This document shows, in pieces, positions 6,375 through 57,687 of a DNA stretch of 64,000 bases. Source of the DNA: Podarcis muralis (Eukaryota); assembly GCF_964188315.1 (NCBI RefSeq), contig NC_135657.1:88412001-88476000 (forward strand), in the 5' to 3' direction. The first letter of the stretch is position 1. Each line of letters opens with the position of its first letter. A program made the translations under genes and the position numbers. The notes beneath the pieces were generated by a model. The model searched no databases. It saw only the letters and a list, made by a program, of their open reading frames with translations, and had not been told where the DNA came from.

Positions 6375-6376
6375 TT

Positions 6377-24809: not shown

Positions 24810-25279
24810 TTACTTTGGGGGTGGGGGTGTTTTAGACTCAACAAGGGAGTCCCAACAGGAGTTCTGTAAAGTTGTAACAGGACTGGCAGTGATCTTTGGA
24901 AGCATTTTATCTCAATGACTGTTGAGGGATTACTGCAAGCTTTACTGTTCATAGTGCATGTCGTTTATGTTTATGATGTTTATAGTGGCACTAGTGATCA
25001 TACTATCCTGGTTACCTGATTAGTTCCCCACCCTCAAGAATCCCTTGTTGTCAAGGGATTATTATTATCAAGGGGTTATTATTTTAGGCTGCAATACTAT
25101 TATTTCCCAAGCTGGTGGTCTGCAATAAACACTTCAGCTAACATGCTCCAATCTAAAATGGCAATAGGGTGCATTTTCCTATAACATAATGTTTCTCCTT
25201 GATTGAAATAACATCAACCAAAATCCTAGTTAGAAGCCACTCAGAGACATGGATTTTAAGAACTTTTGTTTGTTTGCAG

Positions 25280-26754
25280 GCAATCACATTGAGCAACTTC
25301 AGTCAACTTACGTTAGTTCTCATCAGTTCCAGCAAATGTCTAAGGACTTTCAGGCCTGGTTGGACAAAAAGAAGGAAGAACAGAATCAGCCTTGTCCCAT
25401 CTCTACCAAGCTGGAGTCTCTGTGGACATTAATTGATGATCAGAAAGAGTTCAAGGCTGCCTTGTCTGACCAGACTGGCTCTTATGAAAAAATCATTACA
25501 GAAGGTGAAAGTTTACTCCAGAAGACTCAGGGAGCGGAGAAGGCCGAGCTGCAGGCCCAACTGAACTTGCTCAGAGGTAACTGGGATGAAATGAACAAGC
25601 AAGTTAAAGAAAGGCAAGATAAATTAAATGATTGTTTGGAAAAAGCCCTTAGATACAGAGAGCATGTAGAAAACCTACAACCCTGGATAGCGAAATGCCA
25701 AAGCAATATCTCTCAAATAGAAATGAGCATAGATCCTGCTCGGCTAGAGAATTCCATCGCTCAGGTGAAGAGCTGGCAGAAGGACCTAGACAAACACCAA
25801 GGGTTGGTGGAGCTATTAAGTAATGCAGCTGAGACATTACTCAGTGCCTGTCAGACAGACAAAGACATTATTGAAGAGGAGAAGACACTGCTGATCCAGA
25901 ACATGGATATAGTCACAGAACAACTGCATGCTAAGAGAGATGGTCTGGAAAAGATGTCTCAGAGACTGAAAGAGTTTCAAGAGTCATCAAAAGATGTTGA
26001 AGAGCAGCTGAAGAATGCCAGAGAGCAGCTGGAAACACACAATTCTCTCAAACCCCAGACTTACAGTAACAAACACTTGACGATTATGCAGGCTCAGCAG
26101 AAAACACTCCAGGCCGTGAAGGCTCAAGTGGACCTTACAAAAAAGCTTGCCCAAGAACTGGTGGCAGATGCTTCAGATTCATCAGGTGTCTCTGACCTCT
26201 TGTTGCAGGCAGAAACGTTAGAAGAAGAATTCAGCACCATCAGTCAGCAGGTTGAAGATAAATGTTCATTCCTGGAGACTAAACTCCAGGGAATTGGCCA
26301 TTTCCAAAACAGCATCCGAGAGATGTTTTCTCAGTTTGCAGAGTTCGACGATGAATTGGACAGCATGGATTCTGTGGGTAGGGATCTTGTCACACTGCAG
26401 TCACAGCGAAAGGATATAAAAACTTTCCTGAAAAAGTTGGAGGAACTCATAACCAGTAATGAAAATGCAAATAATACCTGCAAAATGATGCTCGCAAATG
26501 AAGCTGAAGCTTCTCCAGATCTTGCAGGTATAAAACGGGACTTGGAGGCTTTAAATAAGCAGTGCAACAAGTTGCTAGACAGAGCAAAAGCCAGAGATGA
26601 ACAGATTGAAGGGACTATTAGCCGCGTTGAAGAGTTCTACAGTAAACTAAAGGGGTTTTCTAAACTGCTTGGGGAAGTTGAAGAGCATGAAGAGTCCCAG
26701 GGTTCTGTTGGAATGGAAATTGAGACGATAAATCAGCAGCTGAACGTATTTAAG
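25280..26754 (+). CDS. DST: Dystonin large 1475-nt rod exon (GNHIEQLQ...NQQLNVFK), phase 1-0
   Basis: tttgcag acceptor, AAG|gtaaga donor; several spectrin repeats ([23 protein letters not shown]). Confidence 0.96.
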
Positions 26755-30891: not shown

Positions 30892-30907
30892 TGTGTATTG
30901 GGGTACT

Positions 30908-37110: not shown

Positions 37111-37844
37111 AGGGGGAAAGCTTCTGCTTTTATTATTATTATTATTACAACTCTGGATGTACCTTTGTTTTTCCTGAAGCCTTTCTCTGTGCCTTGGTCT
37201 CCACAGTCCACAGCTCTTCTGGTTTGTTTTTCTTCAAAAGCGTCCACAACATGGCTTATTTATAAAGGAGATGGAATTCTGCAAGCCATTTAAATGGATT
37301 ACAGTTAATCTGTCACCTCCTGAATATAGTGTGCTGCCTGCTATAATGCTGATTCATTTTGAAGACTTAATCTGGAGATTTAAGACACACATTTTGACCT
37401 AAAAATTGAAATGGAATGCTATGTGGGAAGTTCTGAGTCTTTTGAGCCACTTAAAGATTTTCCTGGGGTTTGGGGGTTTGTACATTTTGTTGGTGTCTTT
37501 GTGCGTTGAGTTAGTATTTTAAAATATTAAAAGGTGTGGGGTTTTTTTGTTTCCCCTCTCCCCACCCCCTTCAGCTCAAGCACTTTATATTTTAGGGGCA
37601 AGGGGAGAAATGTTTTAAATCACAGCCAGGTAAACTTACACAGATGCACTGATTACGACCTTAACCGCCTCATAAATTATTTCCTGTGTTTTAGTATGTA
37701 AGCATCTTTCTGCTGAGGGCAAGTTTACTGTACTTTTTAAAAACTGCTTTTCTATTACTTTATTTTAAATTTTACTTTATGTGTGTTGCGTGTCTCCAAT
37801 AAGGTAGCCTAGCAGCAGTGCTAGATCTGTTAATTCCTGCAGAA

Positions 37845-39143
37845 ATGGGGAAGCCGCTGAGCAGGCCAGACTGTTTACGCCAGAATCCTCCTTGTGTAGG
37901 AAAAGGTGATGAAGAAGAAGAGGATATAAATATTGAGGACTGTTATGTTCCCCAGAGGTCAATCTATGACACAGTGCGGCTGAATGAACAGATTGACTCA
38001 GGTTCTAAAGGCAGCCTCTCCTCCAGGCATTTCTCAGATCGGACTTTGCCGTATAGTCATAGAACACTGGACCTTAGTACATTGTGCTCCAATGGTGCCC
38101 TCTCCTCCTCTAGTGTCTTTGAACTCAGAGGACGGGAAGCCAATAAGCTAGATGAAAAAATGATCTTTGATGCCCTTAAGCTGAACAGTGACATCATTCG
38201 AACAGCTGGCTTGCCCAAAGCAAAGTATCACACAGAAAAGAAAGAACATAGGAGGTCCTGGAGGATGCTTGTCCCACCAAATTTTGCAGACTATGCAAAT
38301 AAAAGTGAGTGCTCACTTGCTGGGACTGTTGATGTGTCCGACTTAGCAGCAACAGGCCAGGTCAAATGTGGGACCAGTTCTCTAACTTCCGAAGAAGATG
38401 ACTCTGGTCTGTGCAGTCCTCCAGCAGAAAGAGAAGAAAAACAAGATGTGCTAGAAGGGGAACAAACTCAGTTTAGGAGCATATCTTCCATAGACGATAA
38501 TCAGTTCATAGGTAAATTTGGATCATTTTCTCCTACCATTTCTAGTAGTGAACATCAAATTTCATTGCTTACCTCCAGAAGTGCCCCTACCAGTGGACAC
38601 TGTCGAGTAAAATTGCAGAATGCTTCACATATAGAGCAAGAATCTTTCTGGAACTATGAGGGCAACCAAGGGGAAGGAGATGGACATTGCAGTCCACTGA
38701 CATATTTGAAAGAAGACCTCTTAGCACATCCAGCATGGCTCCAGGATGGTGAGAGGGAACATGATTTCACTTTAGACAAAGAGGAAGTGAGGAACAGCGC
38801 TGAAGTTAATGAGCCATTAGACACCCAAGACAGGATGATTGAAAAGGACCTCCTGGATATTGCAACTCAGGATATAGATATTTATGATGATGATGATGAT
38901 GATGATGCAGCTTTACATGCTAGTGATACGGACTTAGTAAAATATGTGATTTTGCATGAAACTGAGGAAAGTAATATGGCCCATACAAGTGCAATAGAAT
39001 TGTCCTGTCAGGCTTTAGAGGCTAATAATACCACATGCTGTCAAAAAGCAAATCCAATCAGCGCTGAATTCAGCTTTTGGACTACAGGCATGCAAATAGA
39101 ACAAACCTTGGATACAGTGTGCAATGGCATGTTGTCTTATAAG
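37845..39143 (+). CDS. DST: Putative alternative first coding exon of DST, KIAA0754-like, 433 codons, phase-0 donor
   Basis: Stop-free non-repeat ORF; ATG in gcagaaATGG context; AAG|gtaatt donor at 39143/4 in phase with exon 43244; N-terminus MGKPLSRPDCLRQNP..IEDCYVPQRSIYDTVRLNEQID resembles recalled KIAA0754 N-terminus. Confidence 0.8.
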
Positions 39144-40520
39144 GTAATTCCAAACTTAAATGCATTCTTTTCATGCTGCAGGGTGGGTTATTTTTTATTT
39201 TATAATTTTTTCTTCTGTAATTGCATCATGAATGCTTATGTTTAGATTTTGCTAATCTACCCAAAGAGCTCCTTTAGAATCATTTGCCCAACAAGTTATT
39301 AGAAGGCAGAAATTGGCGAGATGGTCACTTCAGTAAATTGATTAAGGGCAGTTTGTGACAGGGTTGATTGCTTCCAGCTGTTTGGTTGCATGGCTATTTA
39401 TTGTCCAGATGGTGCCTGTTACCCTTTATTTGGAATGCTTCCACCAGGCATTGATGTTCAGCACCCCCTCCTCCCCTCCCCTCAAATTATGTTTCAAGCA
39501 GCCAATGCCATTCAAGGGCAGATAGGCCTTCCCTATTCAGATTTAACCAGATTTCAGCTGCAGCCATATACTGTACACACTTTCATGGGAGTAAGGCCCA
39601 TTAAACCCAACGGGCATGCTTCTTCTGAGCTGACAAGTATAGGATTGCACTGTTCATCATAAAGGTATACACAACGATGCTCAGATTGCTGCGGTTTCCA
39701 AAGTACACAGATTAAAGGCTTGTTGCACGTACTGAAATTATTTCCTTGCATCTTCATGCCAAAAAGTAGTCCTAAAGTTGTAGGGGATTTTTTACAAGAG
39801 ATCTTGTAACATTTACTGAGCGGTGAATGAAGTAAGGAAGTAGAAAACAGCTTTGTAATAAGCATGGGGAGCTTGTGAAGTCTTTAATTTAATTTTGTTC
39901 TTTTTGTTTTTGGTCACTCTGATCTGGTTGTGTCTTGAGTTATTTTAGGAGTTGTTGCTAAGCTGTTCTGGCAAACTCTAGCCTCAATTCCTACTTTTGT
40001 GAGTGGGTATGTGTATCTAAACAACAAATCAAGGGGAACAACTCGGTTTGGATTGCTATGGAATTGTCTTAAAAATATATGAACATCTGAAATAGAGGAG
40101 AGTTGGATTGAAGGACCGCGTTACTAGTTCCATGGGCCTAAACTGGAGCAGGACTTGTGTTTCTCACACAGCAACCTCAAACACAGGAAGCTTCTTTTGA
40201 AAGAGAGGGGAATTTCAAAAGTAGTTTATGGAACCTGGGGTGTGTACATGTGCCTGCCTGTTTGATTGCCAAAGATACTACTGAGCTAACACTTGGGTAT
40301 GTGTAAATTAGCTTTTACATCCCAGCCCTTGTTTATTTCTCTAAAGTAAAGAGAACTTGCCCATATTATATATTATTTTGTGGGAAAGGTAAGACATGTT
40401 TGCTGTTTTCAACTACTTGGTTCCTCAGAACTCTGCTTTATAATGTCCCCCCCCCCCCCAACAAATCCCACAATGTCCTGCAAATAGGTAGTGCTATTGA
40501 GTGCAGCAAAAACAGCATTA

Positions 40521-42730: not shown

Positions 42731-43243
42731 ATGGGCTACTTGTGTCTGCTGGCCATATGCAAAGGATAACTGTTTGCACAGAGTTGCATGGCCCCAAGAA
42801 GAATGGGCTATTGTGAACAGATATCTGAACAATTACTATCCACAATATGTCATCCTCTTCAGTTTGACATAGGTGTCCACAACGTGTACCTTTTGCTTTA
42901 AATATTGTTTGAGCATCTATATTAGGAAGATTCAGTATGGAGCACTATGTTTGTCTCTTCCTTCTAAATACAGTGTTTGTTTTTTTATGTAATAGCAGTT
43001 TCTTAACTCCTGTTTGGGTTAATGTGTATATAATTTACTCTGAGTTGTTTTGTGTTTACAACATTAAGAGCAATTTGACATGTACACTCTGTAGCTAAAT
43101 ACTGTCTTTCCACACTATGTTCATGACATGCTGTGTGATTTTACTACTGATACCTGCTCTGGTCGTCACTTATGCTCAGCATGTTCCAGACTTAATAATC
43201 TAAATGTGCCTTTGCCTTTCTTTCTTTTCCTTTTGATCTGAAG

Positions 43244-43405
43244 GTATTCGAGAAGGAAAAGGTTGAACCACTGCAGCTTAAGCAACAGGAGGTAAATTGG
43301 TTGGGTCAAGGCCTTATTCAGAGTGCTGCTAAAAATGCTAGTACTGAGAACCTTGAGCGTGATCTTGAGGATGTTAACACAAGATGGAAAACTCTCAACA
43401 AAAAG
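43244..43405 (+). CDS. DST: Dystonin exon ([11 protein letters not shown]...WKTLNKK), phase 0-0
   Basis: long pyrimidine tract then aag acceptor, AAG|gtacgc donor; [13 protein letters not shown]. Confidence 0.94.
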
Positions 43406-43799
43406 GTACGCTAGTTGTATTTGCACTCTTGTTTACCTTTCTAGTCTGCTGCTGTTTTTGTTTTGCTCTTATTTCTGATTTTCACTACAAAGTAGTACTA
43501 CACATTATTGTAGTAGACTGCATAATAAAATGCACAAAATCCCCAGTCCAGAACTCCATGTGTGCTCTGGTGCTCATGTAGAGCTCCTACAGAAGCAGAC
43601 TACCCTTTGTCACATGGGTACCCTGTCATTTTAATGTCTATGGAAAGAAACCTGTAGAAAGTCAAAAGCCTAAAGGAAATAGAGGATTGCAAAACATAAT
43701 TCATGGTGCTTTCTGTGTCATGCTGATTGAAGCAAAATGCCTACTCAACTGTCTTCAGCCCTATTTAGGGAAGTTTTTAATAACTGATGCTTTAATGCA

Positions 43800-44231: not shown

Positions 44232-44402
44232 GTTGCCCAAAGAGCAGCTCAGTTGCAAGAGGCACTGCTCCACTGTGGGAGGTTTCAAGATGCTGTCGAA
44301 TCTATCCTTAGCTGGCTTATTGACACAGAAGACCTTGTGGCTAATCAGAAGCCTCCATCTGCTGAGTTCAAAGTTGTGAAGGCCCAAATACAGGAACAGA
44401 AA
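44232..44402 (+). CDS. DST: Dystonin exon ([20 protein letters not shown]...QIQEQK), phase 0-0
   Basis: ttgttag acceptor, AAA|gtgagt donor; RAAQ/GRFQ/SAEFK residues as recalled for DST rather than MACF1. Confidence 0.95.
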
Positions 44403-44885
44403 GTGAGTGGAAGTTATTTATCTATCTTTAGATTAATTATATTTTCTCTGTAACCTGCTCAGTGGGGTATTTTAAACTGTTTTCAAAGCTGTGTTTTAAT
44501 GTTGTAACCCACCCGGGGCCTTAGGATGAATAGTGGGTAATTAATAACAGTAATAACATGTGGTGGCCTGGATAACAGTGTGGCTGAGTATGTATTAGAC
44601 ATGTGCTATAAGAGGTGCAGTTGCAAAAGAACTTGAAAAAAATACATCTCCATAGTCTCTGTGATCCCATCACTTAGGATGGTTGTCATGGATGCTCCTG
44701 GGGGGGGGGGTGTTTGGCTTTTTTCAGGGGAAGGTCAAATTTTCTCAACCCAATCTGTGAAATTCTCTTTAAAGATTTGCCCTTTCCTACTTTCATTTTG
44801 GAATTCTCCACTCATTTTAACAGAGGCATCCAGACTGTAGCATATTAGTGGCACAGGATCTATTAGTCCTGCCTTTTACTTGTAT

Positions 44886-44960
44886 GGCTCAGATTCAGCG
44901 GTAGACAGTGGGTTTTCCTGGGGGAAAGTGGCTAGGCAAGCGGAAGTGTGGGATGAGCCC
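44886..44960. mobile_element. Half copy of the Harbinger-type MITE
   Basis: Reverse complement matches left end of 24554; ends gatgagccc|TAA. Confidence 0.5.
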
Positions 44961-46855
44961 TAAATTGCTTTGGTTCATTCAATGAGAAAAGTGACCAAGA
45001 AATATAACAAATAGTTGGTATGTAAATTTATATCCATCTCTTCTTTCACCATGGAACTCAAAGGAGTTCCCAGGCAGTCTCCCATCCAGGCATTGATTGC
45101 ATCCTTTGTCCGGGGAAATGTGGTTTTCTTCACTTCTTTGGGAAATGTGGGGAGCTGGTGCAGACTGGGGGGGACAGAGGCCATGTATAGCACAGAGTAA
45201 ACAATCATTTCATTGGACCAGCTTTCTGTATATATTGCAAGGAAAACTCTGGAATATCTGTGCTGGTTCTTGGCATCATTTCATGCACGTGTACATTTCA
45301 CTGGATGCACATCAAAAACAATTATTTCGAGGATCAAAAGCAATCTGATGTTTGAAAAGACATCACTGATATTGTGAAAAGGGGCAGGGGGGAGAACATT
45401 GTAGAGCTACTCCCTTAAGTTGAAATAAAGTTCAAAATTTTGTCAGGGCTTCAATCCTCCTTCATCATTTTGACAACCCTCCACCCCACCCCTTCTCAGC
45501 TAATCTCTTTTTCCCATATATGCCATTCAGTGTGGACATATATGAGTTGCCTATACATATGGGTTAGTAAGGGATGAAATCTGTGCCTGGTGTCGGCTTC
45601 TGCTCCACCCCTTACTTCCTGACTTCTGTCTCTATAGAGTTTTGTAGAGTCTGTTTTGATTTAGGGTAACATCTTGTTGTGCCTGTATCTTCAGTTAATA
45701 ATGTCAAACACCCCTGCTTCAGATTGTTCAACAATTGTTTATAACACAGTTGCTGATGGATTGTTAGACCCTCACTTAAAAGGGGCGGGGAAAGAAGGTT
45801 CATATTAAATATTGAATTGGCAGTTGTGGAGTAAATACAGCACATCAAACTCTGTAACCAGATCCATAATTACTTTCCTGTTCAAAATAAATGTATGAGG
45901 AAGGAAAGAGCAGGTCACAGCATGCACAGCATCAGAGAGAAGTTGTGCTCTCTGAGCAGTCTTAACAAAAGGCAGTAGGAGAGAGGAGGGGGGATTTTTG
46001 GCTGAAACATAGAAGGCAACCCTCAGGGAAGAGCACTGCATGAAGCTTAGTGAATCAAGTCCTCAGGTTGTCTGGCCAAAGTGAGTATCCAAAGTTGCAG
46101 CTGCTCGCAACATAATAATCTCCGAAATGATCATATGTTTGTACTGAAAATTTGGGACACAATCCAGAGAAAGTTATAACATGTTTGATTCCCCATTAAA
46201 ATAATTTGGTCTTAGGAACATCATTAAGCCCTGAATTGTGTTCATCTTATTGAATGCAGCCACAAGTGTTTTGAAAGGTGAGCACTATATAAACAAACAG
46301 ATATTTCTCTGGATTGCAGTGGATAGTTGCAAACATCAACAGTGTATTGAAAAGATGGGGAGGGTTCTTATGTGAAGCGGAAAATTTCCTATCTTTTCTT
46401 TTTCCAAAATGGAAAAGCTTCCCCAAAAGTTCCCAGCACTGTTGTGTGTTATAAAATGTCCCACTGTGATTCCCCCCTCTTCCTGCACATGTCAACATCA
46501 TACCTCATATAAGGCATATATATCTGTAGCCCTTCCAGAGGCTTCCAGGATAGCATTGAAAAGAAATCTGAATGAAAACATTTGGAAGGATGCTAGACCT
46601 TTACAACCGATGCTAAGATTGGCACAGTTTGCTCGCTCTCATAATGAAATTACTTATTTATGCAATTTATGGCACTTGCATTGTAAGACTGCTGGCACCC
46701 TCACAATTTCCTGCCATCTCAGAAAATTGTTCCCTTAAGCCTGCCTCTTTTTGCCAGTAAACAAGACCTTGAAGAATCTGCCTCTCAATCTTTTTACAGC
46801 CTTGTAGTGAACAGTCATTTCCTGGCAATTTGATTTTTGATTATTTTGTCTCCAG

Positions 46856-47022
46856 CTTCTCCAGAGATTGCTGGATGACCGCAGACCCACTGTTGAACTA
46901 ATCAAGCGTGAAGGGGAGAAAATTGCAGAGTCAGCAGAGCCCGCTGATAAAGAGAAGATCTTGAAACAGCTGAGCCTCCTGGATAGCAGATGGGATGCAC
47001 TGCTTGATAAAGCAGAAACAAG
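46856..47022 (+). CDS. DST: Dystonin exon ([13 protein letters not shown]...KAETR), phase 0-2
   Basis: tctccag acceptor, AG|gtacct donor. Confidence 0.95.
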
Positions 47023-47435
47023 GTACCTGAAATGTTTGCATTCACTTAGGGGTACAGTAGGGTGTACTCCTTGATACAGCATTAGAAACTAATTTGAAAC
47101 TATAGCAACATTTTCATCCAGTTAACTGTAAGATTCGCATTTGAAGCTAAATGAGAAAATGGCTCTGAGTATATTACAAGTTTTATTTTTAGAAATTTCA
47201 GTGAAATAATATGGGGAAATCAGTATCACATAATCACCCGTTCTTGTAGTAAAGTGGATGTCTCCCATAATCTTCCAATTATGGGAACTACTTTTAGGTG
47301 TAGTTCAGAGATTTTCGAAGTAATTCAGTGAACATAATTAAACCGAAGTAGTTCTTTCCAAGCGCTGATTTTAACTTTTTAGTATTTCATACATCCCTCA
47401 TCCCGCAAAATGGGCTTTGTTTTCACATATTGTAG

Positions 47436-47595
47436 GAATCGTCAGTTGGAAGGTATCTCAGCTGTAGCACAGCAATTCCATGAAACTTTAGAACCACTGG
47501 TTGAGTGGCTAACCATCACTGAAAAGAGGCTTTCAAATTCAGAACCCATTGGAACACAGGCTTCCAAACTACAACAGCAGATTTCTCAACATAAA
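47436..47595 (+). CDS. DST: Dystonin exon ([14 protein letters not shown]...ISQHK), phase 2-0
   Basis: ttgtag acceptor, AAA|gtaaga donor. Confidence 0.95.
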
Positions 47596-47800
47596 GTAAG
47601 ATCTTAATGTGCCTTTGTAAATCAAAAGTGGAGTATTCCCCCCCCAACACATTTTTTATTACTTTGTTTATATTCTTCTTTTACCATCAAAGTTATATTC
47701 TTTTGGTTGTTCTTGAGTTGTTTTCATATTTGGTTTTATGGTTTCTTTTGTTTGCTTGTTTTTCTTTTCTTTTTCTTACTACTTTGAAAACTTCATTTAG

Positions 47801-48127
47801 GCCTTTGAGGAAGACATCGCCACTCGCAACAAAAATTTGGAGCAAGCTATTAATATTGGTCAGGCTTTAAAGGCATTGAGCTCCAAGGAAGACAAGGAAA
47901 TGGTGCAGGAGAAACTAGATTCTTCAGAAGCCCAATACACTGAGATTCGAGAGAAAAGTGGCAGTAGGGCTCAGCTTCTACAGCAAGCCTATTGCAATGC
48001 TCAGATTTTTGGAGAGGATGAAGTTGAATTGATGAATTGGCTGAATGAAGTACATGAGAAACTGAGCAAACTGGCAGTCCAAGACTACAATACTGACTTG
48101 CTTGTGAAACAACAAACTGAAATGCTG
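47801..48127 (+). CDS. DST: Dystonin exon (AFEEDIATR...QQTEML), phase 0-0
   Basis: catttag acceptor, CTG|gtattt donor; IFGEDEVELMNWLNEVH. Confidence 0.94.
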
Positions 48128-48367
48128 GTATTTCCATTTATTTTCTGTTGATTTTATTTTTCCATTTTAAGCACTATTTCATATTACTTCTCATTTTTTT
48201 ATTGTTATAGTCGTTTAATTCTGTATCCTGATCATTTATTTTTAAGCCCTTATCCTCCCCGCACCCTGCTCCAATTCTCACTCTGAGAGAATAAGTGGCT
48301 GCTTATAGACTTTCAGCTTTATAAAAGATGGCTTCTTTGATGATAAAAGCATTCTGAAATTTTCTAG

Positions 48368-48452
48368 GCTCTCCAAGAAGAGATTCTGCTCAGAAAGCAA
48401 AATGTTGACCAGGCTATACAAAATGGTTTGGAACTTCTCAAACAAACAACAG
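48368..48452 (+). CDS. DST: Dystonin exon ([16 protein letters not shown]...KQTT), phase 0-1
   Basis: tttctag acceptor, G|gtgaga donor, 85 nt; hand-translated. Confidence 0.93.
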
Positions 48453-48727
48453 GTGAGAAAGCCATGAGGAAATTAATGATTTATGGCAACAAAGACAAGT
48501 AAAGTAGAAACCTTTGGGGGCTCATTGACTCCTACTGGAACCTTTTTAAAGCTCATTTAAAAAAAAACCTTTTTTGTTCATAAGTAATGGGATAAGTTTA
48601 AAATTATGGGTGCAGTGTCTAATAAAGTTTCACAGTGTAATAGTATACCTGTCCGCTCAGAGGTAAGCATGACTGAGCTCAGCAGAGCTTACTCCCAGGT
48701 ATGTGAAAAGAAAGCAGTAATGAGAGT

Positions 48728-48890
48728 TGGTGTAGCATAGTGGTTGAGAGCATGAGCTGGGAGTCCTCAGTTCAAATTTAACCACAGCCATGAACTTCCT
48801 AGGTGACATTAGGCAAACCATTAATTCAGCCTCAGCCTTCCTGCTGTAATATTCTACTGGTCTACTGTGCAGAGCTATTGGGAAAATTTA
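48728..48890 (+). mobile_element. MIR-like tRNA-derived SINE (old)
   Basis: ggtgtagcatagtggttgagagc A-box, agttcaaat B-box, ggtgacattaggcaa core. Confidence 0.5.
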
Positions 48891-49389
48891 GGGCTGATAG
48901 GAAATTTCTCAGAAGAGAATTTCTTAACAGATGTTTGAACAGTTGGAGAATTTCACTCTACTGCTGGGGAATATATGGTGAAATAGCCTTCCAGATTTCA
49001 TCCTCTTTGAATTTTGAGCACACACTGGATCCAGTTTTAATATTGTTGTGGGGAGCAATAGACTTGGCCTCTACTCCTTCCCATTCTCCTCTCTTACTCC
49101 ATTAGTTCCATGTGTCGTTTCTGTCGGGGAGAGGGAAGGCCTTATCCTTTATGGAAATAGCATATAGATCATTTCTTTGCCTCTGGAAATTATTTCTCTT
49201 ATTTGCATTCCAGGTCTCATCACGAAATGTTGTTCTGCTAGGGACAAGACCCCCAAATTTTGGGGAGTCTTAGGGTTCAGGGATTTGTAAATGAAGTACA
49301 GTGGAGGGTGGTAAAGAAGCTTCTTAAAATTTTGAACTTAACACTAAAAGCGGCTTGAGACTTTTTTTATAGTACAGTATTCAGTTGAA

Positions 49390-49743
49390 GGGACGCGGGT
49401 GGCACTGTGGGTTAAACCACAGAGCCTAGGACTTGCTGATCAGAAGGTCTGCGGTTCGAATCCCTGTGATGGGGTGAGCTCCCGTTTCTCGGTCCCTGCT
49501 CCTGCCAGCCTAGCAGTTCGAAAGCACATCAAAGTGCAAGTAGATAAATAGGTACTGCTCCGGCGGGAAGGTAAACGACGTTTCCATGCGCTGCTCTGGT
49601 TTGCCAGAAGCGGCTTAGTCATGCTGGCCACATGACCCAGAAGCTGTACGCCGGCTCCCTCAGCCAATAAAGCGAGATGAGCGCCGCAACCCCAGAGTCG
49701 GTCACGACTGGACCTAATGGTCAGGGGTGCCTTTACCTTTACC
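49390..49743 (+). mobile_element. Sauria SINE, full length, subfamily B
   Basis: gggacgcgggtggc head, (ACCTTT)n tail, 12-bp TSD tattcagttgaa. Confidence 0.93.
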
Positions 49744-51098
49744 TATTCAGTTGAAACTCTTGAAAACAAGAGTGTGATCACTCACCCCTAACTTGAATAT
49801 GCATGGTTCTGGAAGAATTTGATTATAGTTTGAATAGTTCCTTATTTTTTGAGTAGCACTTCAACATTTTAAAGCAGTTTGTGATGTGTGGTATCATGAT
49901 GCATGTCCATTTGGATCTCAGCCAGTAGATGTAAGGAAGGAGTAAATAGACTGCTTAAACAGCTATATAGAAGAATGTTGTAGTAAATGTTAAAAAAGTG
50001 GTTTTTAAAAAAAATGGACTAAGTAATTGGTCTACCTATTGCTGTGAGAGAGGCTGCTTCCCCCACAGTGGACCTAGTACTGTAGGAAAGTTGCATTCCA
50101 ATTGCACACAGCATGTCTGGCTTGTAGACCAACATCTTCTAAATTTTCCAGTCTCTAACTCCATGAACTCTCCAAGATATACATAGTTTGGGGCTGGGAA
50201 GAAGGGAGGGAGGAGAGAAGGAGATGAATTACAGAATTAGAAACTGAATTGTTCACTGAAAGGTAAACATAAAGTATAACGAACAGTGCAGTTTCAATTC
50301 TGACTTTTACTCTCTTTATAATGGCGATTGCGTGGACATAGCCACTCAAAGAGGAAAATGTTCTTAATTGTAATTAGCGCTGTCAGTTGATTCATTACCT
50401 GCCTTATTTTAATGGATTAAATTTAATCACTGTACATACCACAAAATCTCAATATTTGTGTAATTTCATGTATATTGGAGAAAAGACATAGTTGGTTGTT
50501 GTTTTAAAGATATAGTCAAATAAAGTTGCCATGCGGTGTTAGAAGGAAAGGCCATCCATCTGCTCCTTAGTCTGGAATGCTATCACGTTATTCCCATATT
50601 CAGAGAGACCAATTCTGAACTTCAGAGCAGGAAACACCCTGAGCCATGAATAGTGAGCTCTGCCTACCATACTGCCTGTCACCTACTCAGAAGTCACTAG
50701 GGCTCCCAGCTTGTACTGATGACTTAATTGGCGTGAGCCAGTGCATAGAACAGGGATAGGGAGTCCAGATGTTGTTGGACTCCCATCTCCCTGTCAGCAT
50801 CGCCCTTGAGCCAGTGCACCAACTGGACTCATGCACCTCAACCCCGACTGGGCTAGGCGAGCTGGGTAGCACTGCCAGAGACCTCCTTTCTCACAGGAAC
50901 AGGTCACAGTGCTGTGGACTCACAGCTTAGAGCTGAGAGCACCGGATTCACAATAATACAGTCGTTGCGCAGCAGAGTTTTGCAGAGTCTTGCAGAGTAT
51001 AAACCACTCGGAGAGCAGCTCTGTAAAATATCTTCCTTTTATTCTGTAACTACAACTATGATACAAAACTATATACAGAGCTGAATATTCTAAGCATA

Positions 51099-52780
51099 CC
51101 GTATTTTTCGCACCATAGGACGCAGTTTTTCCGTCTTAAAAACTAAGGGGAAATGTGTGTGCGTCCTATGGAGCGAATGCAGGCTCCCTGGCTTCAGCGA
51201 TAGCAAGGCAAAGCCTCCGAAGCCTGCGCTCCGGAGGCTTCCCGTTGCTTCCGCTGAAGCCAGGAGAGTCTGCTCTTTGAGGCTGGCGGGGGGAAAAGCA
51301 GCGCTTCCCCCATCGCCAGCCCCAGACGATGGGGGGCAGCAGGAAGGTGCGCGACGCCTTCCCGCTACTCTCCAACCCTCCTGTGGGCTTTTGCGGGAGA
51401 TGGGGGAATTCCCCCACCTCCCGCAAAAGCAGGCAAAAGCCGTGCGCTCTTTAAAGGGGCTGCGCGGCTTTGCTGGCTTTTCTAGGAGGTGGGGGAATTC
51501 CCCCACCTCGCAGAAAAGCCCGCAGGAGCCGCGCACCCTTTAAAGAGCAAGCGGCTCTTGGGGGCTTTTCCCCAAGGAGGGAGAAGGGACTGACTGGCTG
51601 AGTCAGTCCCTTCTCCCTGCTGCGCGCTTTTGCGGGAGATGGGGGAATTCCCCCACCTCCCGCAAAAGCAGGCAAAAGCCGTGCGCTCTTTAAAGAGGCT
51701 GCGCGGCTTTGCTGGCTTTTCTAGGAGGTGGGGGGATTCCCCCACCTCGCAGAAAAGCCTGCAGGAGCCGCTCACCCTTTAAAGAGCAAGCGGCTCTTGG
51801 GGGCTTTTCCCCAAGGAGGGAGAAGGGACTGACTGGCTGAGTCAGTCCCTTCTCCCTCCTGCGGGCTTTTGCGGGAGATGGGCGAATTCCCCCACCTCCC
51901 GCAAAAGCAGGCAAAAGCCGTGCGCTCTTTAAAGGGGCTGCGCGGCTTTGCTGGCTTTTCTAGGAGGTGGGGGAATTCCCCCACCTCGCAGAAAAGCCCG
52001 CAGGAGCCGCGCACCCTTTAAAGAGCGAGCGGCTCTTGGGGGCTTTTCCCCAAGGAGGGAGAAGGGACTGACTGGCTGAGTCAGTCCCTTCTCCCTGCTG
52101 CGCGCTTTTGCGGGAGATGGGGGAATTCCCCCACCTCCCGCAAAAGCAGGCAAAAGCCGTGCGCTCTTTAAAGGGGCTGCGCGGCTTTGCTGGCTTTTCT
52201 AGGAGGTGGGGGAATTCCCCCACCTCGCAGAAAAGCCCGCAGGAGCCGCGCACCCTTTAAAGAGCGAGCGGCTCTTGGGGGCTTTTCCCCAAGGAGGGAG
52301 AAGGGACTGACTGGCTGAGTCAGTCCCTTCTCCCTGCTGCGCGCTTTTGCGGGAGATGGGGGAATTCCCCCACCTCCCGCAAAAGCAGGCAAAAGCCGTG
52401 CGCTCTTTAAAGAGGCTGCGCGGCTTTGCTGGCTTTTCTAGGAGGTGGGGGGATTCCCCCACCTCGCAGAAAAGCCTGCAGGAGCCGCGCACCCTTTAAA
52501 GAGCGAGCGGCTCTTGGGGGCTTTTCCCCAAGGAGGGAGAAGGGACTGACTGGCTGAGTCAGTCCCTTCTCCCTCCTGCGGGCTTTTGCGGGAGATGGGG
52601 GAATTCCGGCACCTCCCGCAAAAGCAGAGAGAAGGTCTTGGAGTAGCGCACAGGCTGCGTGCAGCCTGTCCACTGCTCCCAGAGCTGGGGGGGGGGGAAT
52701 CATATTTTTTCCTTGATTTCCCCCCCTGAAAACTAGGTGCGTCCTATGGTCCGGTGCGTCCAATCGTGCGAAAAATACGG
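51099..52780. mobile_element. Tc2-type (TcMar) non-autonomous element, 1682 bp, no transposase
   Basis: TA|ccgtatttttcgcaccataggacgca ... tgcgtccaatcgtgcgaaaaatacgg|TA; CCGTA termini with TA TSD; subterminal tgcgtcctatgg repeats. Confidence 0.85.
51377..52628. repeat. 239-bp tandem array (5 full units plus a partial sixth), each unit made of hairpins
   Basis: gcttttgcgggag recurs at 51387, 51626, 51865, 52104, 52343, 52582. Confidence 0.97.
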
Positions 52781-53343
52781 TAAATCAATGCTACACTGAG
52801 AGTCTGCAGCTGCTCTTAGCAGCAACCTTATCTCTAGGATCTCTAACACTCTCTCTCTCTCCGATACACTGACTAACTGACTGACTCTCTCACACACACA
52901 GATTGATGTGGTGCTGGGCAGAATAAGTAGATAGCAGGACACGCCTCCTCCTCTCTGGAGAGTCAGCAGAGACCATCAGGAGATCATCAGGAGATTCTTG
53001 GGTATGGGAGGGGTGAAATCTCCTCACTCCCATCAGAGCCGACCAATAATCATGCAAAGAGTTGTAGTCCAACAACATCTGGATGGCCACAGGTTCCTCG
53101 TCCCTGACCTAGAGAATCCTGATTGGCTGAGGCTTGACCTAGATTTATTTTGGTGGAGCCCAATCTAAAATAAGATGGGGTGGGCTAAAGTTGCATGTGC
53201 ACAGCAAACCTTCCATGCTCAGAAGAAAAACTAGCTTAATCAGGATGAAATATTTGTTCTATTTTCACCTGTGGACTTAAACACTAAAAACATCCTGGTC
53301 GCTTTAGATGATTTGTGTGTTAAATACCCCTTTCACATTGCAG

Positions 53344-53585
53344 GTGATGAAGTTGTCATAATTCAGGATAAATTGGAAGGCATTAAAACAAGGTACAAGG
53401 ACATAACTAAGCTGAGTTCTGATGTGTCCAAGACTTTAGAACAGGCTCTACAGCTTTCTGGTCAGCTGCAGTCAGCTCATGAGAAACTCTGCACTTGGCT
53501 GGATAAAGTTGAGGTGGAATTACAGTCGTACGAAGCGCAGGTCCCCAAAGGTGAAGAGTTAAGTCAAGCGCAAGAAAGACAAAAG
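53344..53585 (+). CDS. DST: Dystonin exon ([12 protein letters not shown]...QERQK), phase 1-0
   Basis: ttgcag acceptor, AAG|gtgagc donor. Confidence 0.95.
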
Positions 53586-54161
53586 GTGAGCATAAAATGC
53601 TGTGTTTGCTTGTGGACAGCGTTCCGGGGGTCACTTGCCAGCAGCAAAGATGGCTGGAGCAACAGGCGTGACACTTCCCTTTGTACAGCTACACAGAAGT
53701 TGGGACGTTTTTGCATGTATTCACACCTCATGCACATCCCTTCACCCTTCATCCGGCTAAGCAAGAAGCATCATCATATTTCAGAGTAGGGGAGGGAGGT
53801 GGAGAGAGAGAGATGGGGTATTGTTCTTTTGCACTATCATCTTTTATTAGTTTAGAGGTTTGTGTCAGCATCATGTAGGTAGGTCCTTTGTTTATTTATA
53901 TTGATAGTGTGAGAGGTTAGGGGGTCCCAAGCATGATTGTAACAAAAGCAAAGGTAGCCAAGTTGAAAAGAGTGATATTTATAGCTTTGGTTTGCTGCTG
54001 TAGCATTTCAACTATGTACTCTTAAACTAAATAAAAAAACTGAAGATGGGAGAAGGAGAAAACCAAAAAAGCCTCATGGGTGGAACCTTTGAGCTGTGCA
54101 GATTTTGTTTCTGCGCCAATGTGTTATTTTTAATTTGTTTACCTTAAATATTCCTTTTTAG

Positions 54162-54368
54162 GCACTGAAAAAAGAAGCAAAAGATAATAAAAGTTTACTG
54201 GACACTCTTAATGAAGTCAGCAGTGCTTTGCTTGAACTGGTGCCATGGAGAGCAAGGGAAGGGATAGACAAAATGATCACAGAAGACAACGAACGGTACA
54301 GATTAGTGAGTGACACTATAACTCAGAAAGTGGAAGAAATTGATGCTGCCATTTCCAGATCGCAGCAG
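54162..54368 (+). CDS. DST: Dystonin exon ([10 protein letters not shown]...ISRSQQ), phase 0-0
   Basis: ttttag acceptor, CAG|gtaaaa donor; [12 protein letters not shown]. Confidence 0.94.
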
Positions 54369-55299
54369 GTAAAAATGACCATAATTCTCATTTCAGTCTA
54401 TGCGTGATAGGGAAAAAAAATATGTATATTTATCTGTTCAAGGAATATATCCAGGTGTATATCTGGGAATCCGTACCAAAAGAAAAGGCTGCTGTTCATA
54501 TTATTGGCACATGCATGCTACGTCTTTGCAAGAACTGGGGCCAAACTTGAAAAGAGCTTGGTCATAGTTGTCAGACATGAGTCCTAGACCAAAGCAAATC
54601 CAGTCATTGTTGTAGCCATCTGTCTTCTAGTTGACACAGAAATTACAGATCAGTCTCATACTGAGAGGCATTACGAGTGGCATCATGCAGTGATCTCAGT
54701 GGGAATTTCAGTACAGAAAGAATTGTAAACTCAAACCCTGTAACTTATTATTTATGCTGCTATGTAGGTCATATATCAGCTTGTGTAAATGAATGGTTGA
54801 AGTAAAGATGCGTACAGTAGCCAGTGGATGCAGTTTTGCAGGAAATATAAACATTATTTGCAGTTGCGGGCAGCATTAAAATGAGCTTAATATACACATC
54901 AGTGTATATTTTCTTTTTCTTTTTTAGAGCTTCTAATTTGTTGGCCCTTTAATTTAGTATGACTCAGTTTATATGCCTCTCTTTCAAAACAGAATGTTCA
55001 GGCCAAAAGTACCTTCTCTGATTATAAATGTGAGATGACAGCAAATGTTTGTGGCTTGTTTCAAATAGATTAAACAGTGTGATAAAGAATTACTCATGAA
55101 AAACATGGAGAAACCTCAACCCACGTAACTTGCTTTTCAGTCATGATTCATAATTAAAGAATAAGATATGACAGCTTATCCATTAAATTTCACCTTCAGT
55201 TGGAAGTGACTCTGTCACCACAAACATGTAAATTATCAACTTTCTCAAGCAGCTTAATAGGATTATTTCTTGTTCAACCAGCATATGTTGAAAGCATCA

Positions 55300-55385
55300 G
55301 ACATAATGAAGAATTTTGATGACCTCTAAAGGTTGCATATGCTCCCACCAACATGAGTGGGTCCAATAAAAGTTATCCACCTTAT
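55300..55385 (+). mobile_element. Decayed Penelope-like tail with degenerate hammerhead
   Basis: taatgaagaattttgatgacctctaaaggttgca..caccaac..gggtccaataaaag resembles recalled reptile PLE tails. Confidence 0.4.
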
Positions 55386-57422
55386 CAGTTTCTCTACCAC
55401 TTTCTTTTAGGAACATGATTCACGTTGAAACTTGTTGTGTATATTTATTTGTCTGTTTAAACTAGACCATTCAAGTATTGTGCTTCACGCGCATACCAAT
55501 TGCTCTACAGTAGACTTCTCTAACTTGGTGCCCTCAATATAATTTGGACTCCAGATCGCAGCAGCCCCAGTCAGTATGGCCAGTGATGGAAACTGTATTT
55601 TAAAGCATTTGGAAAGAACCAGGATGGGGAAGGCTCTCAAAGTTCTCCAAAGCTCTCGAGTTCAGTTGAGAACTGGTCTGGTGAGCCCAGGGGAAGAAAC
55701 AAAGTTGAGGGTGGAACATTTGCATATGACAGCAGTGCCTAGTGGGATAACAGACCCTGGCTTCCCTTCCCCTGCGCCATCCACATGTTGAAAGGGAAGG
55801 TCTGAAATGAGGAGTCTGCTTTGTGTGTAGGCTCTGCCTCTGTCAGAACCCTTTGTGATCAGGGTGCTAATCTAGGTTCACACAGCGGGCTCTCCCTTCT
55901 TTAGAACCTTCCCCCAGAGTGTGGAAGTCAGGGTACCGCAAGTAGTATTGTCATGGTGGTGGGAAGCTCAGTGGGCACAAACTTGCTCTCTTCTCCCATG
56001 CATGTTCGGAAAATGACATTTGAAAGAAATCCACTAGTGGTCTCTGAAAGGATAAGGTTTTCAGGGGGAAAATATGTGTATGCTATAGATACTCAAGACT
56101 TGCGTTCGCACAACTGGACTGTCAACTTCTACCAAGAAGCAATTCCTATTTTGCTGCCCATTGATTTTAATGCCATTGATCTAGCCTAACTAAAAAATAA
56201 TCTCTCTATTGAGGCAGGGAAATAATCTTAAAGATGGACAAGAGCAAGAGATGTTTAAAGAAAAGCAAGTATTAATATTACCTTTGATGTTTGTGAGAAT
56301 TTTGACAGAGAATTCTGGTTGAAGTATAAAGTATAATGTGGCTCTGACATTTCCTGCTTCCTCTTTGTAACACTTCTGAAATAAGCTGATTTTGATATAC
56401 TCCTCAGTGTCACAGAGAGCCCTAGAATTTAATAAAATAAGAACAAACTGTGTGGTTATTATAAGAAGCTGCATTATATTCAGTCACAGCAACGAGCCAC
56501 CTAGCCTCACACTCTTAACTACTAGCACTGATTCCAGGATGCTGTGCTGCTGACCTGAAAGTCATTATTCTTCAACAAAATAACTTCAAAGGGAAACTTT
56601 AGCCAGCAGCTGCTGAACAAAAATTCATCAGCAAGCTTGAAGCTACTTGTTTCAATTTCATTCAAGGCAAAGTTTTTTTCTCCTATTTCATTAAATTATC
56701 ACAGCAAAGAGAGGAAAATTATATCGTTGCATATACCGGTAATTTGTGAATGATCACTGTGTTTATTTCGTATACTTTTGAGCTTTGCACAGAGACATCA
56801 CACTTGCTATTCAAAGATATTTGGCCCACTGCTTACAATCTTTACCTTTCTGACTCTGTATGTGTTTGACCAATGCCACTGAAGCATGTTGCACTATTCT
56901 GCCTTGCCTTACCTGTCCCTTTAAGAATACCCAGATTTCTCTCATCCTCCATCATATCTCTTAAGTGAAGAGGCCACATCTCCTCTTCCAGGTCTAAATG
57001 CACAAACTGTGGAAAGCTTATGGTCTAGCAGGGAAGTTAACAGGCACTATCTTGTTGCCATTGACACCTTGATCGCTTCATCCTCTATCCCCTCCCGAAG
57101 GTGTTGCAACACACATTCTTAGCCATGTGCAACTCCCTTAGCATTGCAGCTTAAAATACCCACCATTCTAGAACTGGCCTAGAGGCAGCTTTGCAATTGA
57201 GGGTTATACTGGTTCTGATATCCAAAACATAAACAGGTTCTCATAAACTTGGGGCTGTGTAAATGTAACCAGTGCAGTCTTACCACTGAGCTATGATCCG
57301 CACCTCTGAATCTTAAGAAATGTCTTTTCTGAAATATCTTTTCCATTTGAACCCTCTACGCATCCAGTTGGAGTTATTTTTTTATTAATTGCTTTTTTTA
57401 TTTTTTTCTGTATTTTCTTTAG

Positions 57423-57542
57423 TTTGATCAAGCAGCCGACACTGAATTAGCCTGGGTTGAGGAAACAGAAAATAAACTGATGTCTCTGGGTGACATTAGG
57501 CTTGAACGTGACCAGACCATTGCTCAGCTACAAGTTCAAAAG
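57423..57542 (+). CDS. DST: Dystonin exon ([11 protein letters not shown]...QLQVQK), phase 0-0
   Basis: long T tract then ag, AAG|gtgaac donor, 120 nt. Confidence 0.94.
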
Positions 57543-57687
57543 GTGAACAAATGTGATTCCATCTGTAATGCAATAATTAATGGCCATTACTTTTTCTGCC
57601 ATGATTTAATTTTCAGACCATTATAGTGCAGGCTTTTGCTCTATGTCCTCATATTCCTAATACCAGAGTATTGTATTATGTAATTAG

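What the first reader, a model, noticed from the sequence alone, without database searches (positions are those of the whole stretch)
37845..37895. N-myristoylation plus palmitoylation signature at the start of the nested exon
Seen: M-G-K-P-L-S with Gly2 and Ser6, Cys10 and Cys17, and G at both -3 and +4 of the ATG. Established: MGxxxS is the N-myristoyltransferase consensus (MGK starts occur in myristoylated neuronal calcium sensors), and nearby cysteines are often S-palmitoylated. Inference: the short isoform would tether microtubules to membranes through lipids rather than through actin. Caveat: Pro4 may lower efficiency.
Basis: partly seen in the sequence, partly recalled or inferred. Interest (0 to 1): 0.7.

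Follow-up and report, generated by a model that had tools for sequence, protein, structure and literature searches.

The report
Lipid-anchor start of short dystonin
An alternative first exon inside a lizard dystonin gene starts with a predicted fatty-acid anchor signal unchanged from hagfish to mammals, so a short dystonin (and its MACF1 twin) probably links microtubules to membranes, though the lipids are untested.

Summary
ATG at 37845 has G at -3 and +4 and opens MGKPLSRPDCLRQNPPC: Gly2, Ser6, Cys10, Cys17.

The window is squamate dystonin (DST). Exon 37845-39143 lies in the intron between two spectrin-rod exons and is an alternative first coding exon.

- In 218 of 223 collected homologues the start is MGKPLS[RK]P with Cys10, plus a second Cys at 16-20. 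This holds in both DST and MACF1, from hagfish to mammals.
- Third codon positions vary freely and sequence upstream of the ATG is not conserved. The constraint is therefore on the protein and begins at Met1.
- About 60 gene models over 1500 aa start at this Met. Four mammalian mRNA contigs (2636-2690 aa ORFs) do too. Those checked continue into spectrin repeats, EF-hands and the GAS2 microtubule-binding domain.
- GKPLSR fits the measured NMT rule for Lys3 substrates (GKXXSX), with favourable Leu5 and basic Arg7.
- AlphaFold gives no regular structure for residues 1-39.

N-myristoylation is likely (about 0.75). S-palmitoylation (about 0.5) and membrane-microtubule tethering are inferred.

The exon is already annotated (MACF1 'isoforms 6/7', KIAA0754) and is noted in one review. 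I found no paper on its lipidation. No RNA reads could be laid for this lizard.

The parts
37842..37848 (+). Translation start context gaaATGG, with G at -3 and G at +4
   Evidence: A purine at -3 and G at +4 are kept in all 7 loci compared, from whale shark to mammal.
37845..37895 (+). Codons 1-17, MGKPLSRPDCLRQNPPC: predicted N-myristoylation site (Gly2, with Lys3, Leu5, Ser6, Arg7) and candidate S-acylation sites Cys10 and Cys17
   Evidence: Searches give M1 G2 K3 P4 L5 S6 P8 C10 C17 as invariant columns. The peptide fits the GKXXSX rule.
37845..38024 (+). Residues 1-60, close to 100% conserved across DST orthologues. It contains the basic lipid-anchor stretch, an acidic run, and the second invariant block Y-x-PQRSIYDT-x-R-x-NEQID
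   Evidence: conservation in blocks of 10; invariant columns; helix 40-51; no regular structure in 1-39.
37845..39143 (+). Alternative first coding exon of the short DST isoform: 433 codons, ending in phase 0. Residues 1-150 are conserved; residues 160-433 diverge and are predicted disordered
   Evidence: There is no Pfam family.
39144..39149 (+). Splice donor GTAATT. The GT is kept in all homologues: every unspliced record reads Val straight after the exon end
37575..37844 (+). Conserved non-coding sequence upstream of the ATG, probably 5' UTR or proximal promoter. It holds the in-frame TAA at 37800-37802
   Evidence: the lizard-bird DNA alignment runs from 37575 at 76% identity, while the shark alignment starts only at 37832. 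for the TAA.
25249..26754 (+). Upstream spectrin-repeat exon of full-length DST, ending in phase 0 at AAG|GTAAGA. The start coordinate is that of the ORF, not a mapped acceptor. The intron that follows carries the nested exon
43241..43408 (+). Next coding exon (spectrin rod), joined to the nested exon in orthologous short-isoform proteins.
   Evidence: Local mapping of proteins onto the window.
44232..62401 (+). Further rod exons of the short isoform: 44232-44405, 46886-47023, 47434-47598, 47801-48127, 48347-48466, 53346-53585, 54165-54371, 57426-57566, 57688-57795, 58943-59140, 60612-60815, 61845-62075, 62171-62401 (tblastn ranges, not exact splice sites)
   Evidence: squamate proteins named Dystonin match at 85-98%, squamate MACF1 at 56-80%.

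Best explanation
The ATG at 37845 starts a short dystonin (DST) isoform transcribed from inside the gene. The isoform consists of a 433-residue head exon that is mostly disordered, the distal spectrin repeats, EF-hands and the GAS2/GAR microtubule-binding domain. It has no calponin-homology actin-binding head and no plakin domain.

Proposed mechanism:
- Methionine aminopeptidase removes Met1.
- N-myristoyltransferase acylates Gly2 during translation.
- Myristate together with the basic residues Lys3, Arg7, Arg12 and Lys20 gives weak membrane affinity.
- That affinity lets membrane-bound DHHC acyltransferases S-acylate Cys10 and Cys17, locking the head on a membrane.
- The distant GAR end binds microtubules.

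Shown here: the start codon, the exon structure, the DST identity, the domain architecture in orthologues, the extreme protein-level conservation, and the fit to measured NMT rules. Inferred: the lipid attachment itself, which membrane is targeted, and the tethering function.
For: 1. Motif and start context are as described.
2. MGKPLS[RK]P with Cys10 occurs in 218 of 223 homologues, with a second Cys at 16-20, in both DST and MACF1 and in hagfish.
3. Synonymous codon variation under invariant residues 1-15, with non-conserved sequence upstream of the ATG, points to protein-level selection beginning at Met1.
4. Met1 is the only invariant Met in the module.
5. An exhaustive HMMER search places the module at residue 1 of nearly every target, long ones included.
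6. About 60 records over 1500 aa start with it. Both models scanned in full here, the catfish MACF1 model P0142 and the lizard DST model P0203, carry 11 spectrin repeats, EF-hands and GAS2. Nearly all the other long records list EF-hand and GAS2 families as well.
7. Four Logan contigs of 9-10 kb from four runs carry uninterrupted 2636-2690 aa ORFs starting at this Met behind non-coding leaders, so they are spliced mRNAs.
8. The donor GT is kept in all species.
9. Joining the upstream rod exon to the AG at 37842 gives a stop after 5 codons, so the exon cannot be an in-frame cassette.
10. NMT rules: all ten human GK-starting peptides tested were Gly-myristoylated; the deduced motif is GKXXSX; a hydrophobic residue 5 and a basic residue 7 favour the reaction. 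GKPLSR has Leu5, Ser6 and Arg7.
11. AlphaFold2 predicts no regular structure for residues 1-39.
12. Teleost paralogues add extra Cys next to Cys10 and Cys17 (MGKPLSRPCCFRQCPCC). This suits an acylation cluster better than a fixed metal or disulfide site.
Against: - No lipid attachment has been measured. The peptide GKPLSRP appears in no paper of the library, nor in the myristoylome supplements I could search.
- Lys3 is described as less favourable than small uncharged residues, and position 7 is Arg, not the Lys that was studied. Pro4 and Pro8 were not among the peptides tested.
- As I recall it, the PROSITE myristoylation pattern excludes Lys after Gly. It also misses the proven neuronal calcium sensors.
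- Invariance of Lys3, Pro4, Leu5 and Pro8 goes beyond what NMT requires, so another constraint may act.
- Cys10 and Cys17 lie further from Gly2 than in Src-family kinases or G-alpha proteins.
- The mammalian mRNA leaders carry 6-14 upstream ATGs, which should reduce initiation at this ATG.
- Several genome annotations model the exon as a separate single-exon gene of 430-490 aa.
Confidence: 0.65

Rival explanations
1. The N-terminus is real, but it is conserved as a peptide recognition motif rather than as a lipid anchor. MGKPLS[RK]PDC would be bound by a partner protein, or serve as a glycine N-degron, and Gly2 would stay unacylated or be only partly acylated.
For: Lys3, Pro4, Leu5 and Pro8 are invariant over more than 200 sequences, although the paper describes NMT pockets 4 and 5 as accepting all side chains. 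Lys3 is a less favourable NMT context. The rest of the head also looks like a string of short linear motifs in a disordered region.
Against: The two readings do not exclude each other, since partners can recognise a myristoylated peptide. All ten human GK-starting peptides that carry Ser6 were NMT substrates. Extra cysteines accumulate around Cys10 and Cys17 in teleost paralogues. A basic stretch directly follows Gly2.
Confidence: 0.17
2. The exon mainly encodes a stand-alone nested protein of about 430-490 aa. It may still be lipid-anchored, but it is not joined to the microtubule-binding end, so the tether idea fails.
For: NCBI models it as a separate 'uncharacterized protein LOC...' inside the spectraplakin gene in Elgaria, Pogona, Pogoniulus and Elephas. 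A human cDNA-derived record of 424 aa exists. [quoted passage not shown] The MACF1 version is named KIAA0754 homolog, as a separate protein.
Against: Those single-exon models simply read through the donor into the intron. The donor GT and the phase-0 exon end are conserved in all vertebrates. Four mRNA contigs and about 60 gene models join the exon to the downstream rod; the four contigs and the two models scanned in full, and nearly all long records, carry EF-hands and GAS2. Both products could coexist.
Confidence: 0.1
3. The ATG is not used as a start. The exon would be an internal cassette of long DST, or the open frame would be a non-translated by-product, which makes the MG motif meaningless.
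For: A cag at 37840-37842 preceded by pyrimidines looks like an acceptor. The mammalian leaders are long and full of upstream ATGs. A few ab initio models place the module internally, namely P0152, P0159 and P0196.
Against: Splicing the upstream exon (which ends at 26754 in phase 0) to 37843 gives AAA TGG GGA AGC CGC TGA, a stop. The AG is absent in Elgaria and Pogona. Conservation begins exactly at Met1 and follows a codon pattern. The module sits at residue 1 in 173 of 218 records; the other 45 are mostly ORF-caller extensions into non-conserved upstream sequence, plus the few ab initio models just named. An in-frame stop lies 15 codons upstream here and 28 codons upstream in the mammalian mRNAs.
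Confidence: 0.03

Closest known systems
MACF1 'isoforms 6/7' (KIAA0754-type alternative first exon of the paralogous spectraplakin)
   Same: The head module is homologous. It starts with the identical MGKPLSRPDC, has a second Cys, an acidic run, IEDCYVPQRSIYDT-x-R-x-NEQID, KLDE-x-IFDALKL and RRSW. It lies in the rod region and is followed by spectrin repeats, EF-hands and GAS2, as in the 3242-aa model P0142.
   Different: It is a different gene: the window is DST. The MACF1 exon is much longer, about 900-1400 aa against 433. The name comes from database records, and I found no functional or lipidation study of it.
BPAG1a3 / dystonin isoform 3 N-terminus (the published myristoylation motif of dystonin)
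   Same: Same gene, and the same idea: an alternative first exon gives dystonin a lipid-anchor motif in place of a full actin-binding head.
   Different: It is a different exon at the 5' end of the gene, followed by the CH2 and plakin domains. The exon studied here lies deep in the spectrin rod and drops the whole actin-binding and plakin part. I did not retrieve the isoform-3 sequence, so no alignment was made.
GK-starting NMT substrates (hippocalcin/NCS1 family, ARF6, TMEM106A/B, NKD1/2)
   Same: Gly2-Lys3 with Ser6. TMEM106B (GKSLSHLP) shares Leu5-Ser6 and lacks Lys7, yet is an efficient substrate. The deduced rule is GKXXSX.
   Different: Pro4, Arg7 and Pro8 were not represented among the tested peptides. 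Apart from the start, the proteins are unrelated.
Dual-acylated N-termini (Src-family kinases, G-alpha i/o, eNOS; from my own knowledge)
   Same: Myristoyl-Gly2 plus nearby cysteines that become S-palmitoylated once myristate brings the chain to a membrane. As I recall, eNOS uses cysteines well away from Gly2 (Cys15 and Cys26), much like Cys10 and Cys17 here.
   Different: In Src-family kinases and G-alpha proteins the Cys is at positions 3-6. Nothing has been measured for this protein.

Membership tests
Co-translational N-myristoyltransferase substrates | Initiator Met followed by Gly2 at a genuine translation start | tested here: met
   ATG GGG at 37845. Protein-level conservation begins at Met1. 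The module is at residue 1 of targets. mRNA contigs carry stops upstream.
Co-translational N-myristoyltransferase substrates | Small uncharged residue at position 6 (Ser preferred); for Lys3 substrates, the motif GKXXSX | tested here: met
   G-K-P-L-S-R here.
Co-translational N-myristoyltransferase substrates | Favouring features: hydrophobic residue 5, basic residue 7 | tested here: met
   Leu5 is invariant and position 7 is Arg or Lys. Their roles are described, where Lys7 was studied and Arg7 was not.
Co-translational N-myristoyltransferase substrates | Flexible, unstructured N-terminal segment | tested here: inconclusive
   The AlphaFold2 model has no secondary structure in residues 1-39, with pLDDT 52-65 there and a mean of 57.6. 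This fits the requirement, but low confidence is not proof of disorder.
Co-translational N-myristoyltransferase substrates | Myristate shown on Gly2 | not testable with these tools
   No mention in the searched papers or supplements.
Dual-acylated (myristoyl plus S-palmitoyl) N-terminal anchors | Conserved cysteine(s) close to the myristoylated Gly in a non-structured, basic context | tested here: inconclusive
   Cys10 is present in all 218 records and a second Cys lies at 16-20 in all. Teleost paralogues add extra Cys. Lys3, Arg7, Arg12 and Lys20 are invariant or nearly so. The distance from Gly2 is larger than in Src-family kinases and G-alpha proteins, and no predictor was available.
Dual-acylated (myristoyl plus S-palmitoyl) N-terminal anchors | Thioester-linked acyl chains shown on the cysteines | not testable with these tools
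   Needs acyl-PEG exchange, acyl-RAC or alkyne-palmitate labelling.
Dystonin (DST) orthologue, not MACF1 | Flanking rod exons closer to DST than to MACF1 of the same clade | tested here: met
   Phrynosoma and Pseudonaja proteins named Dystonin match the downstream exons at 85-98%. Crotalus and Gekko MACF1 match at 56-80% (names).
Spectraplakin internal-start isoform (MACF1 isoforms 6/7 type) | Homologous head exon in the rod region, joined to distal spectrin repeats, EF-hands and GAS2 | tested here: met
   The exon chain in the window is mapped up to 62401; the EF-hands and GAS2 lie beyond the window and are seen only in orthologues.
BPAG1a3 (dystonin isoform 3) myristoylation exon | First exon at the 5' end of the gene, followed by the CH2 and plakin domains | tested here: not met
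   This exon sits between spectrin-rod exons. Its isoforms carry no CH or plakin families.

The most novel reading that the evidence does not exclude
MGKPLS[RK]PDC...C, together with the PQRSIYDT/NEQID helix, would be a vertebrate-specific membrane-targeting head more than 500 million years old, shared by the short isoforms of both DST and MACF1. It would define a third class of spectraplakin that links microtubules to a particular membrane, not to actin or intermediate filaments. The invariance of Lys3, Pro4, Leu5 and Pro8 would mean that the lipidated peptide is read by a dedicated receptor or chaperone.
Probability: 0.3. Interest if true: 0.72.

Novelty: new member of a known kind. Interest (0 to 1): 0.5.

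Why it matters
Dystonin and MACF1 are giant cytoskeletal linkers whose loss causes neurodegeneration and skin, muscle and brain-development defects. Work on them has centred on isoforms that carry the actin-binding head.

An internally started isoform with a lipid anchor would connect microtubules directly to membranes. Mutations or knock-outs placed in the 5' half of the gene would leave it intact, which would change how such alleles are interpreted.

The head module is among the most conserved parts of both genes, yet it belongs to no Pfam family and I found no functional study of it. The most complete survey of human GK-starting NMT substrates that I could read did not include it. The prediction can be tested quickly with standard reagents.

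Tried and rejected
- **RNA reads.** There is therefore no read-level evidence for the transcription start or the splice junctions in this lizard. Later local scripts mapped proteins onto the whole window file as the target. The exon at 43241-43408 had already been located.
- **Run index.** The look-up of sequencing runs listed 14 small runs guessed to be RNA that hold 45-80% of the stretch's words. Their RNA status is only a guess, so I do not count them as evidence.
- **Family and atlas scans.** Pfam finds nothing in the exon. The ESM Atlas feature search gave only sub-threshold, unrelated hits.
- **Literature.** The peptide GKPLSRP appears in no paper. Searches for KIAA0754, O94854 and FLJ26213 returned only gene-list mentions. 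Castrec et al. 2018 is not held. The myristoylome supplements contain no GKPLS N-terminus. The MACF1 entry in Thinon et al. is a caspase-generated internal Gly5087, unrelated to this start.
- **Cassette-exon reading.** Rejected, because splicing into the AG at 37842 is out of frame and that AG is not conserved.
- **Coding exon at 33845-34082.** Rejected, because there are stops in all three frames.
- **Missing locus.** The Latimeria MACF1 locus could not be fetched.
- **Human sequence.** The human cDNA-derived protein P0056 was left out of the alignments and counts. It was used once, only to confirm that the mRNA contigs are not human (81-83% identity). No human contig was fetched.

Full report
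**1. The observation**

- ATG lies at 37845-37847, g at 37842 (-3) and G at 37848 (+4).
- Codons 1-17 (37845-37895) read MGKPLSRPDCLRQNPPC.
- An in-frame TAA lies 15 codons upstream at 37800-37802.
- The frame stays open for 433 codons to 39143, where AAG|GTAATT makes a phase-0 donor.

Taken alone, an MGxxxS start is weak evidence. Only about 2% of human proteins are myristoylated, so the case rests on context and conservation.

**2. What the locus is**

The window carries spectrin-repeat exons on the + strand and is a vertebrate spectraplakin gene.
- Squamate proteins named Dystonin (Phrynosoma P0203, Pseudonaja P0205) match the exons downstream of the finding at 85-98% identity.
- Squamate MACF1 proteins (Crotalus, Gekko) match the same exons at only 56-80%.

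The gene is therefore DST.

The upstream rod exon ends at 26754 in phase 0. The next rod exon starts near 43241. The exon under study lies in the 16.5-kb intron between them.

The cag at 37840-37842 looks like an acceptor. Joining 26754 to 37843 would read AAA TGG GGA AGC CGC TGA, which is a stop. That AG is also missing in the lizards Elgaria and Pogona. The exon therefore cannot be an in-frame cassette of long DST.

**3. Is the ATG a real start?**

*Word search.* It found 195 homologues, from sharks, sturgeon and teleosts to turtles, birds, squamates and mammals. All 120 listed keep MGKPLSRPDCL, while whatever the ORF caller added upstream is unrelated between groups.

*Exhaustive HMMER search.* It gave 48 representative hits. 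In nearly all of them the match begins at residue 1 of the target. This includes proteins of 881-3242 aa and a hagfish protein of 1899 aa that starts MGKPLSKPDC.

*Long models.* A region search with a long query returned about 70 long proteins, and about 60 collected records over 1500 aa start at this Met. About half are named MACF1, some of them 'isoforms 6/7-like'. About 30 are named or matched as dystonin, at 2100-2750 aa. Of the 70, 57 list both EF-hand and GAS2 families; eight partial or low-quality models list spectrin repeats only, three list GAS2 without an EF-hand and two an EF-hand without GAS2. In my own scans, the catfish MACF1 model P0142 and the lizard DST model P0203 each have 11 spectrin repeats, EF-hands and a GAS2 domain.

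*Transcript contigs.* Four Logan contigs of 9.1-10.1 kb from four sequencing runs carry uninterrupted ORFs of 2636-2690 aa that begin at MGKPLS.
- They can only be spliced mRNAs.
- Their leaders (384 nt, and 1.0-1.09 kb) contain no spectrin coding sequence.
- In the three longer ones there is an in-frame stop 28 codons upstream of the ATG, and the 5' end is GC-rich.
- They come from non-human mammals: 81-83% identity to the human record.

*Codon pattern.* Across seven loci (three lizards, a bird, two mammals, a whale shark), codons 1-15 encode identical residues while third positions differ at almost every degenerate site. The 30 nt upstream are not conserved, apart from a purine at -3.

*Only one conserved Met.* Met1 is the only invariant methionine of the module.

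*Donor.* Every unspliced genomic record reads Val (GTN) immediately after the exon end, which shows that the donor is conserved.

I conclude that this is a genuine, ancient alternative first coding exon.

**4. The head module**

In 119 DST-type sequences residues 1-60 are close to 100% identical and residues 1-150 are well conserved. Residues 160-433 have drifted.

In an alignment of 38 diverse DST and MACF1 heads the invariant columns are:
- M1 G2 K3 P4 L5 S6 P8 C10 C17
- D32 Y34 P36 Q37 R38 S39 I40 Y41 T43 N47 E48 I50 D51
- L102 D103 D109 L111 K112
- S138 W139

Counts over all collected records:
- 213 start MGKPLSRP and 5 start MGKPLSKP.
- One salmonid has MGNPLS.
- Cys10 is present in all 218.
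- A second Cys lies at 16-20 in all 218, and at exactly position 17 in 212.
- Teleost extra paralogues add more, for example MGKPLSRPCCFRQCPCC.

AlphaFold2, run with this alignment, gives a low-confidence and mostly unstructured model (mean pLDDT 57.6). It has two short helices, at 40-51 (pLDDT about 88) and at 104-111, and nothing regular in 1-39. No Pfam family covers the head. All recognisable relatives of the head come from vertebrates, cyclostomes included.

**5. Does it fit N-myristoyltransferase?**

Rivière et al. (bioRxiv 10.1101/2021.06.22.449375) measured human GK-starting peptides from ARF6, HPCA, HPCL4, VSNL1, NCS1, TMEM106A/B, NKD1/2 and one more.
- All were myristoylated on Gly.
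- Lys3 is less favourable than small residues.
- Ser6 and a basic residue 7 help.
- A hydrophobic residue 5 compensates when Lys7 is absent, as in TMEM106B (GKSLSHLP).
- The deduced motif is GKXXSX.
- Pockets 4 and 5 are described as accepting all side chains.

GKPLSRP has Leu5, Ser6 and Arg7 and so fits the rule. Pro4, Arg7 and Pro8 were not tested directly. The peptide is not in their list, nor in the other myristoylome data I could search.

The published MACF1 myristoylation concerns a caspase-exposed Gly5087. The published dystonin myristoylation motif belongs to isoform 3, at the 5' end of the gene. Both are different sites.

**6. Palmitoylation and function**

Two invariant cysteines sit in a basic, unstructured stretch (Lys3, Arg7, Arg12, Lys20) just after a probable myristoyl-Gly. 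Some lineages add further cysteines there. This fits the kinetic-trapping model of dual acylation, which is established knowledge; I recall eNOS as a precedent for distant cysteines. No predictor or experiment was available, so this stays an inference at about even odds.

The tether idea follows from the architecture: a lipid head, a spectrin rod, EF-hands and a GAR domain, with no CH or plakin domains. I found no study that tests it.

**7. Rivals**

- A peptide-recognition or N-degron role without lipid (0.17). The over-conservation of Lys3, Pro4, Leu5 and Pro8 suggests it, though the two roles could coexist.
- A stand-alone nested protein (0.10). Several annotations and a review's wording suggest it. 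The spliced mRNAs and the conserved donor show that the long product exists.
- Not a start at all (0.03). Section 3 contradicts this.

**8. What is known and what is new**

The exon is present in databases as MACF1 isoforms 6/7, KIAA0754 homolog, and many predicted short dystonins.

I found nothing on its N-terminal lipidation. I therefore file the finding as a new, still predicted, member of a known kind: a dual-acylation-type N-terminal anchor on an alternative spectraplakin head. It is of moderate interest, sharpened by the exceptional conservation.

**9. Limits**

- No RNA reads could be laid for this species.
- The EF-hand and GAR exons lie outside the window.
- Names of homologues are database names.
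- Statements about PROSITE, eNOS and Src-family kinases come from my own memory.

Noticed in passing
window 39310-39420: A non-coding block 170-280 nt downstream of the exon's donor can be aligned between lizards, a bird and a whale shark. It holds two E-box-like cores, CAGCTG and CAGATGG. It may be an intronic enhancer serving the internal promoter.
   Followed up: partly
window 33845-34082: A non-coding block is 84.6% identical to Elgaria, higher than the neighbouring intron. It lies in a 500-nt stretch with CpG observed/expected 0.9 and has stops in all three frames. It could be an upstream non-coding exon or the promoter of the short transcript.
   Followed up: partly
L002:1-1023, L003:1-1090, L004:1-1080: The mammalian short-dystonin mRNA contigs have leaders of about 1 kb with 13-14 upstream ATGs, including an upstream ORF of about 100 codons (MPPGLGVLRG...). 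Some gene models (P0123, P0149) fuse that ORF to the exon and so skip MGKPLSRPDCLRQ.
   Followed up: partly
window 37944-37997 (residues 34-51): A second invariant block, Y-x-PQRSIYDT-x-R-x-NEQID, is partly predicted as a confident short helix (40-51). YDTV in DST and YDTM in MACF1 fit a YxxPhi sorting or phosphotyrosine-type motif. Its function is unknown.
   Followed up: no
window 38142-38180 and 38250-38264 (about residues 100-112 and 136-140): Two further motifs are conserved in both paralogues: KLDE-x-IFDALKL (a short predicted helix) and RRSW. No known domain matches them.
   Followed up: no
window 6314-7303 (-) and 13851-14372 (-): Open frames that look, by eye, like a LINE-type reverse transcriptase and another retroelement sit in DST introns. 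These are ordinary intronic repeats; neither was scanned against any family library.
   Followed up: no
L001 and L008 (Elgaria and Pogona loci): NCBI annotation models this exon as a separate 487-aa 'uncharacterized protein' gene nested in the 7.9-kaa spectraplakin gene. The model reads through the conserved donor into the intron and is probably a mis-model of the short isoform's first exon.
   Followed up: partly
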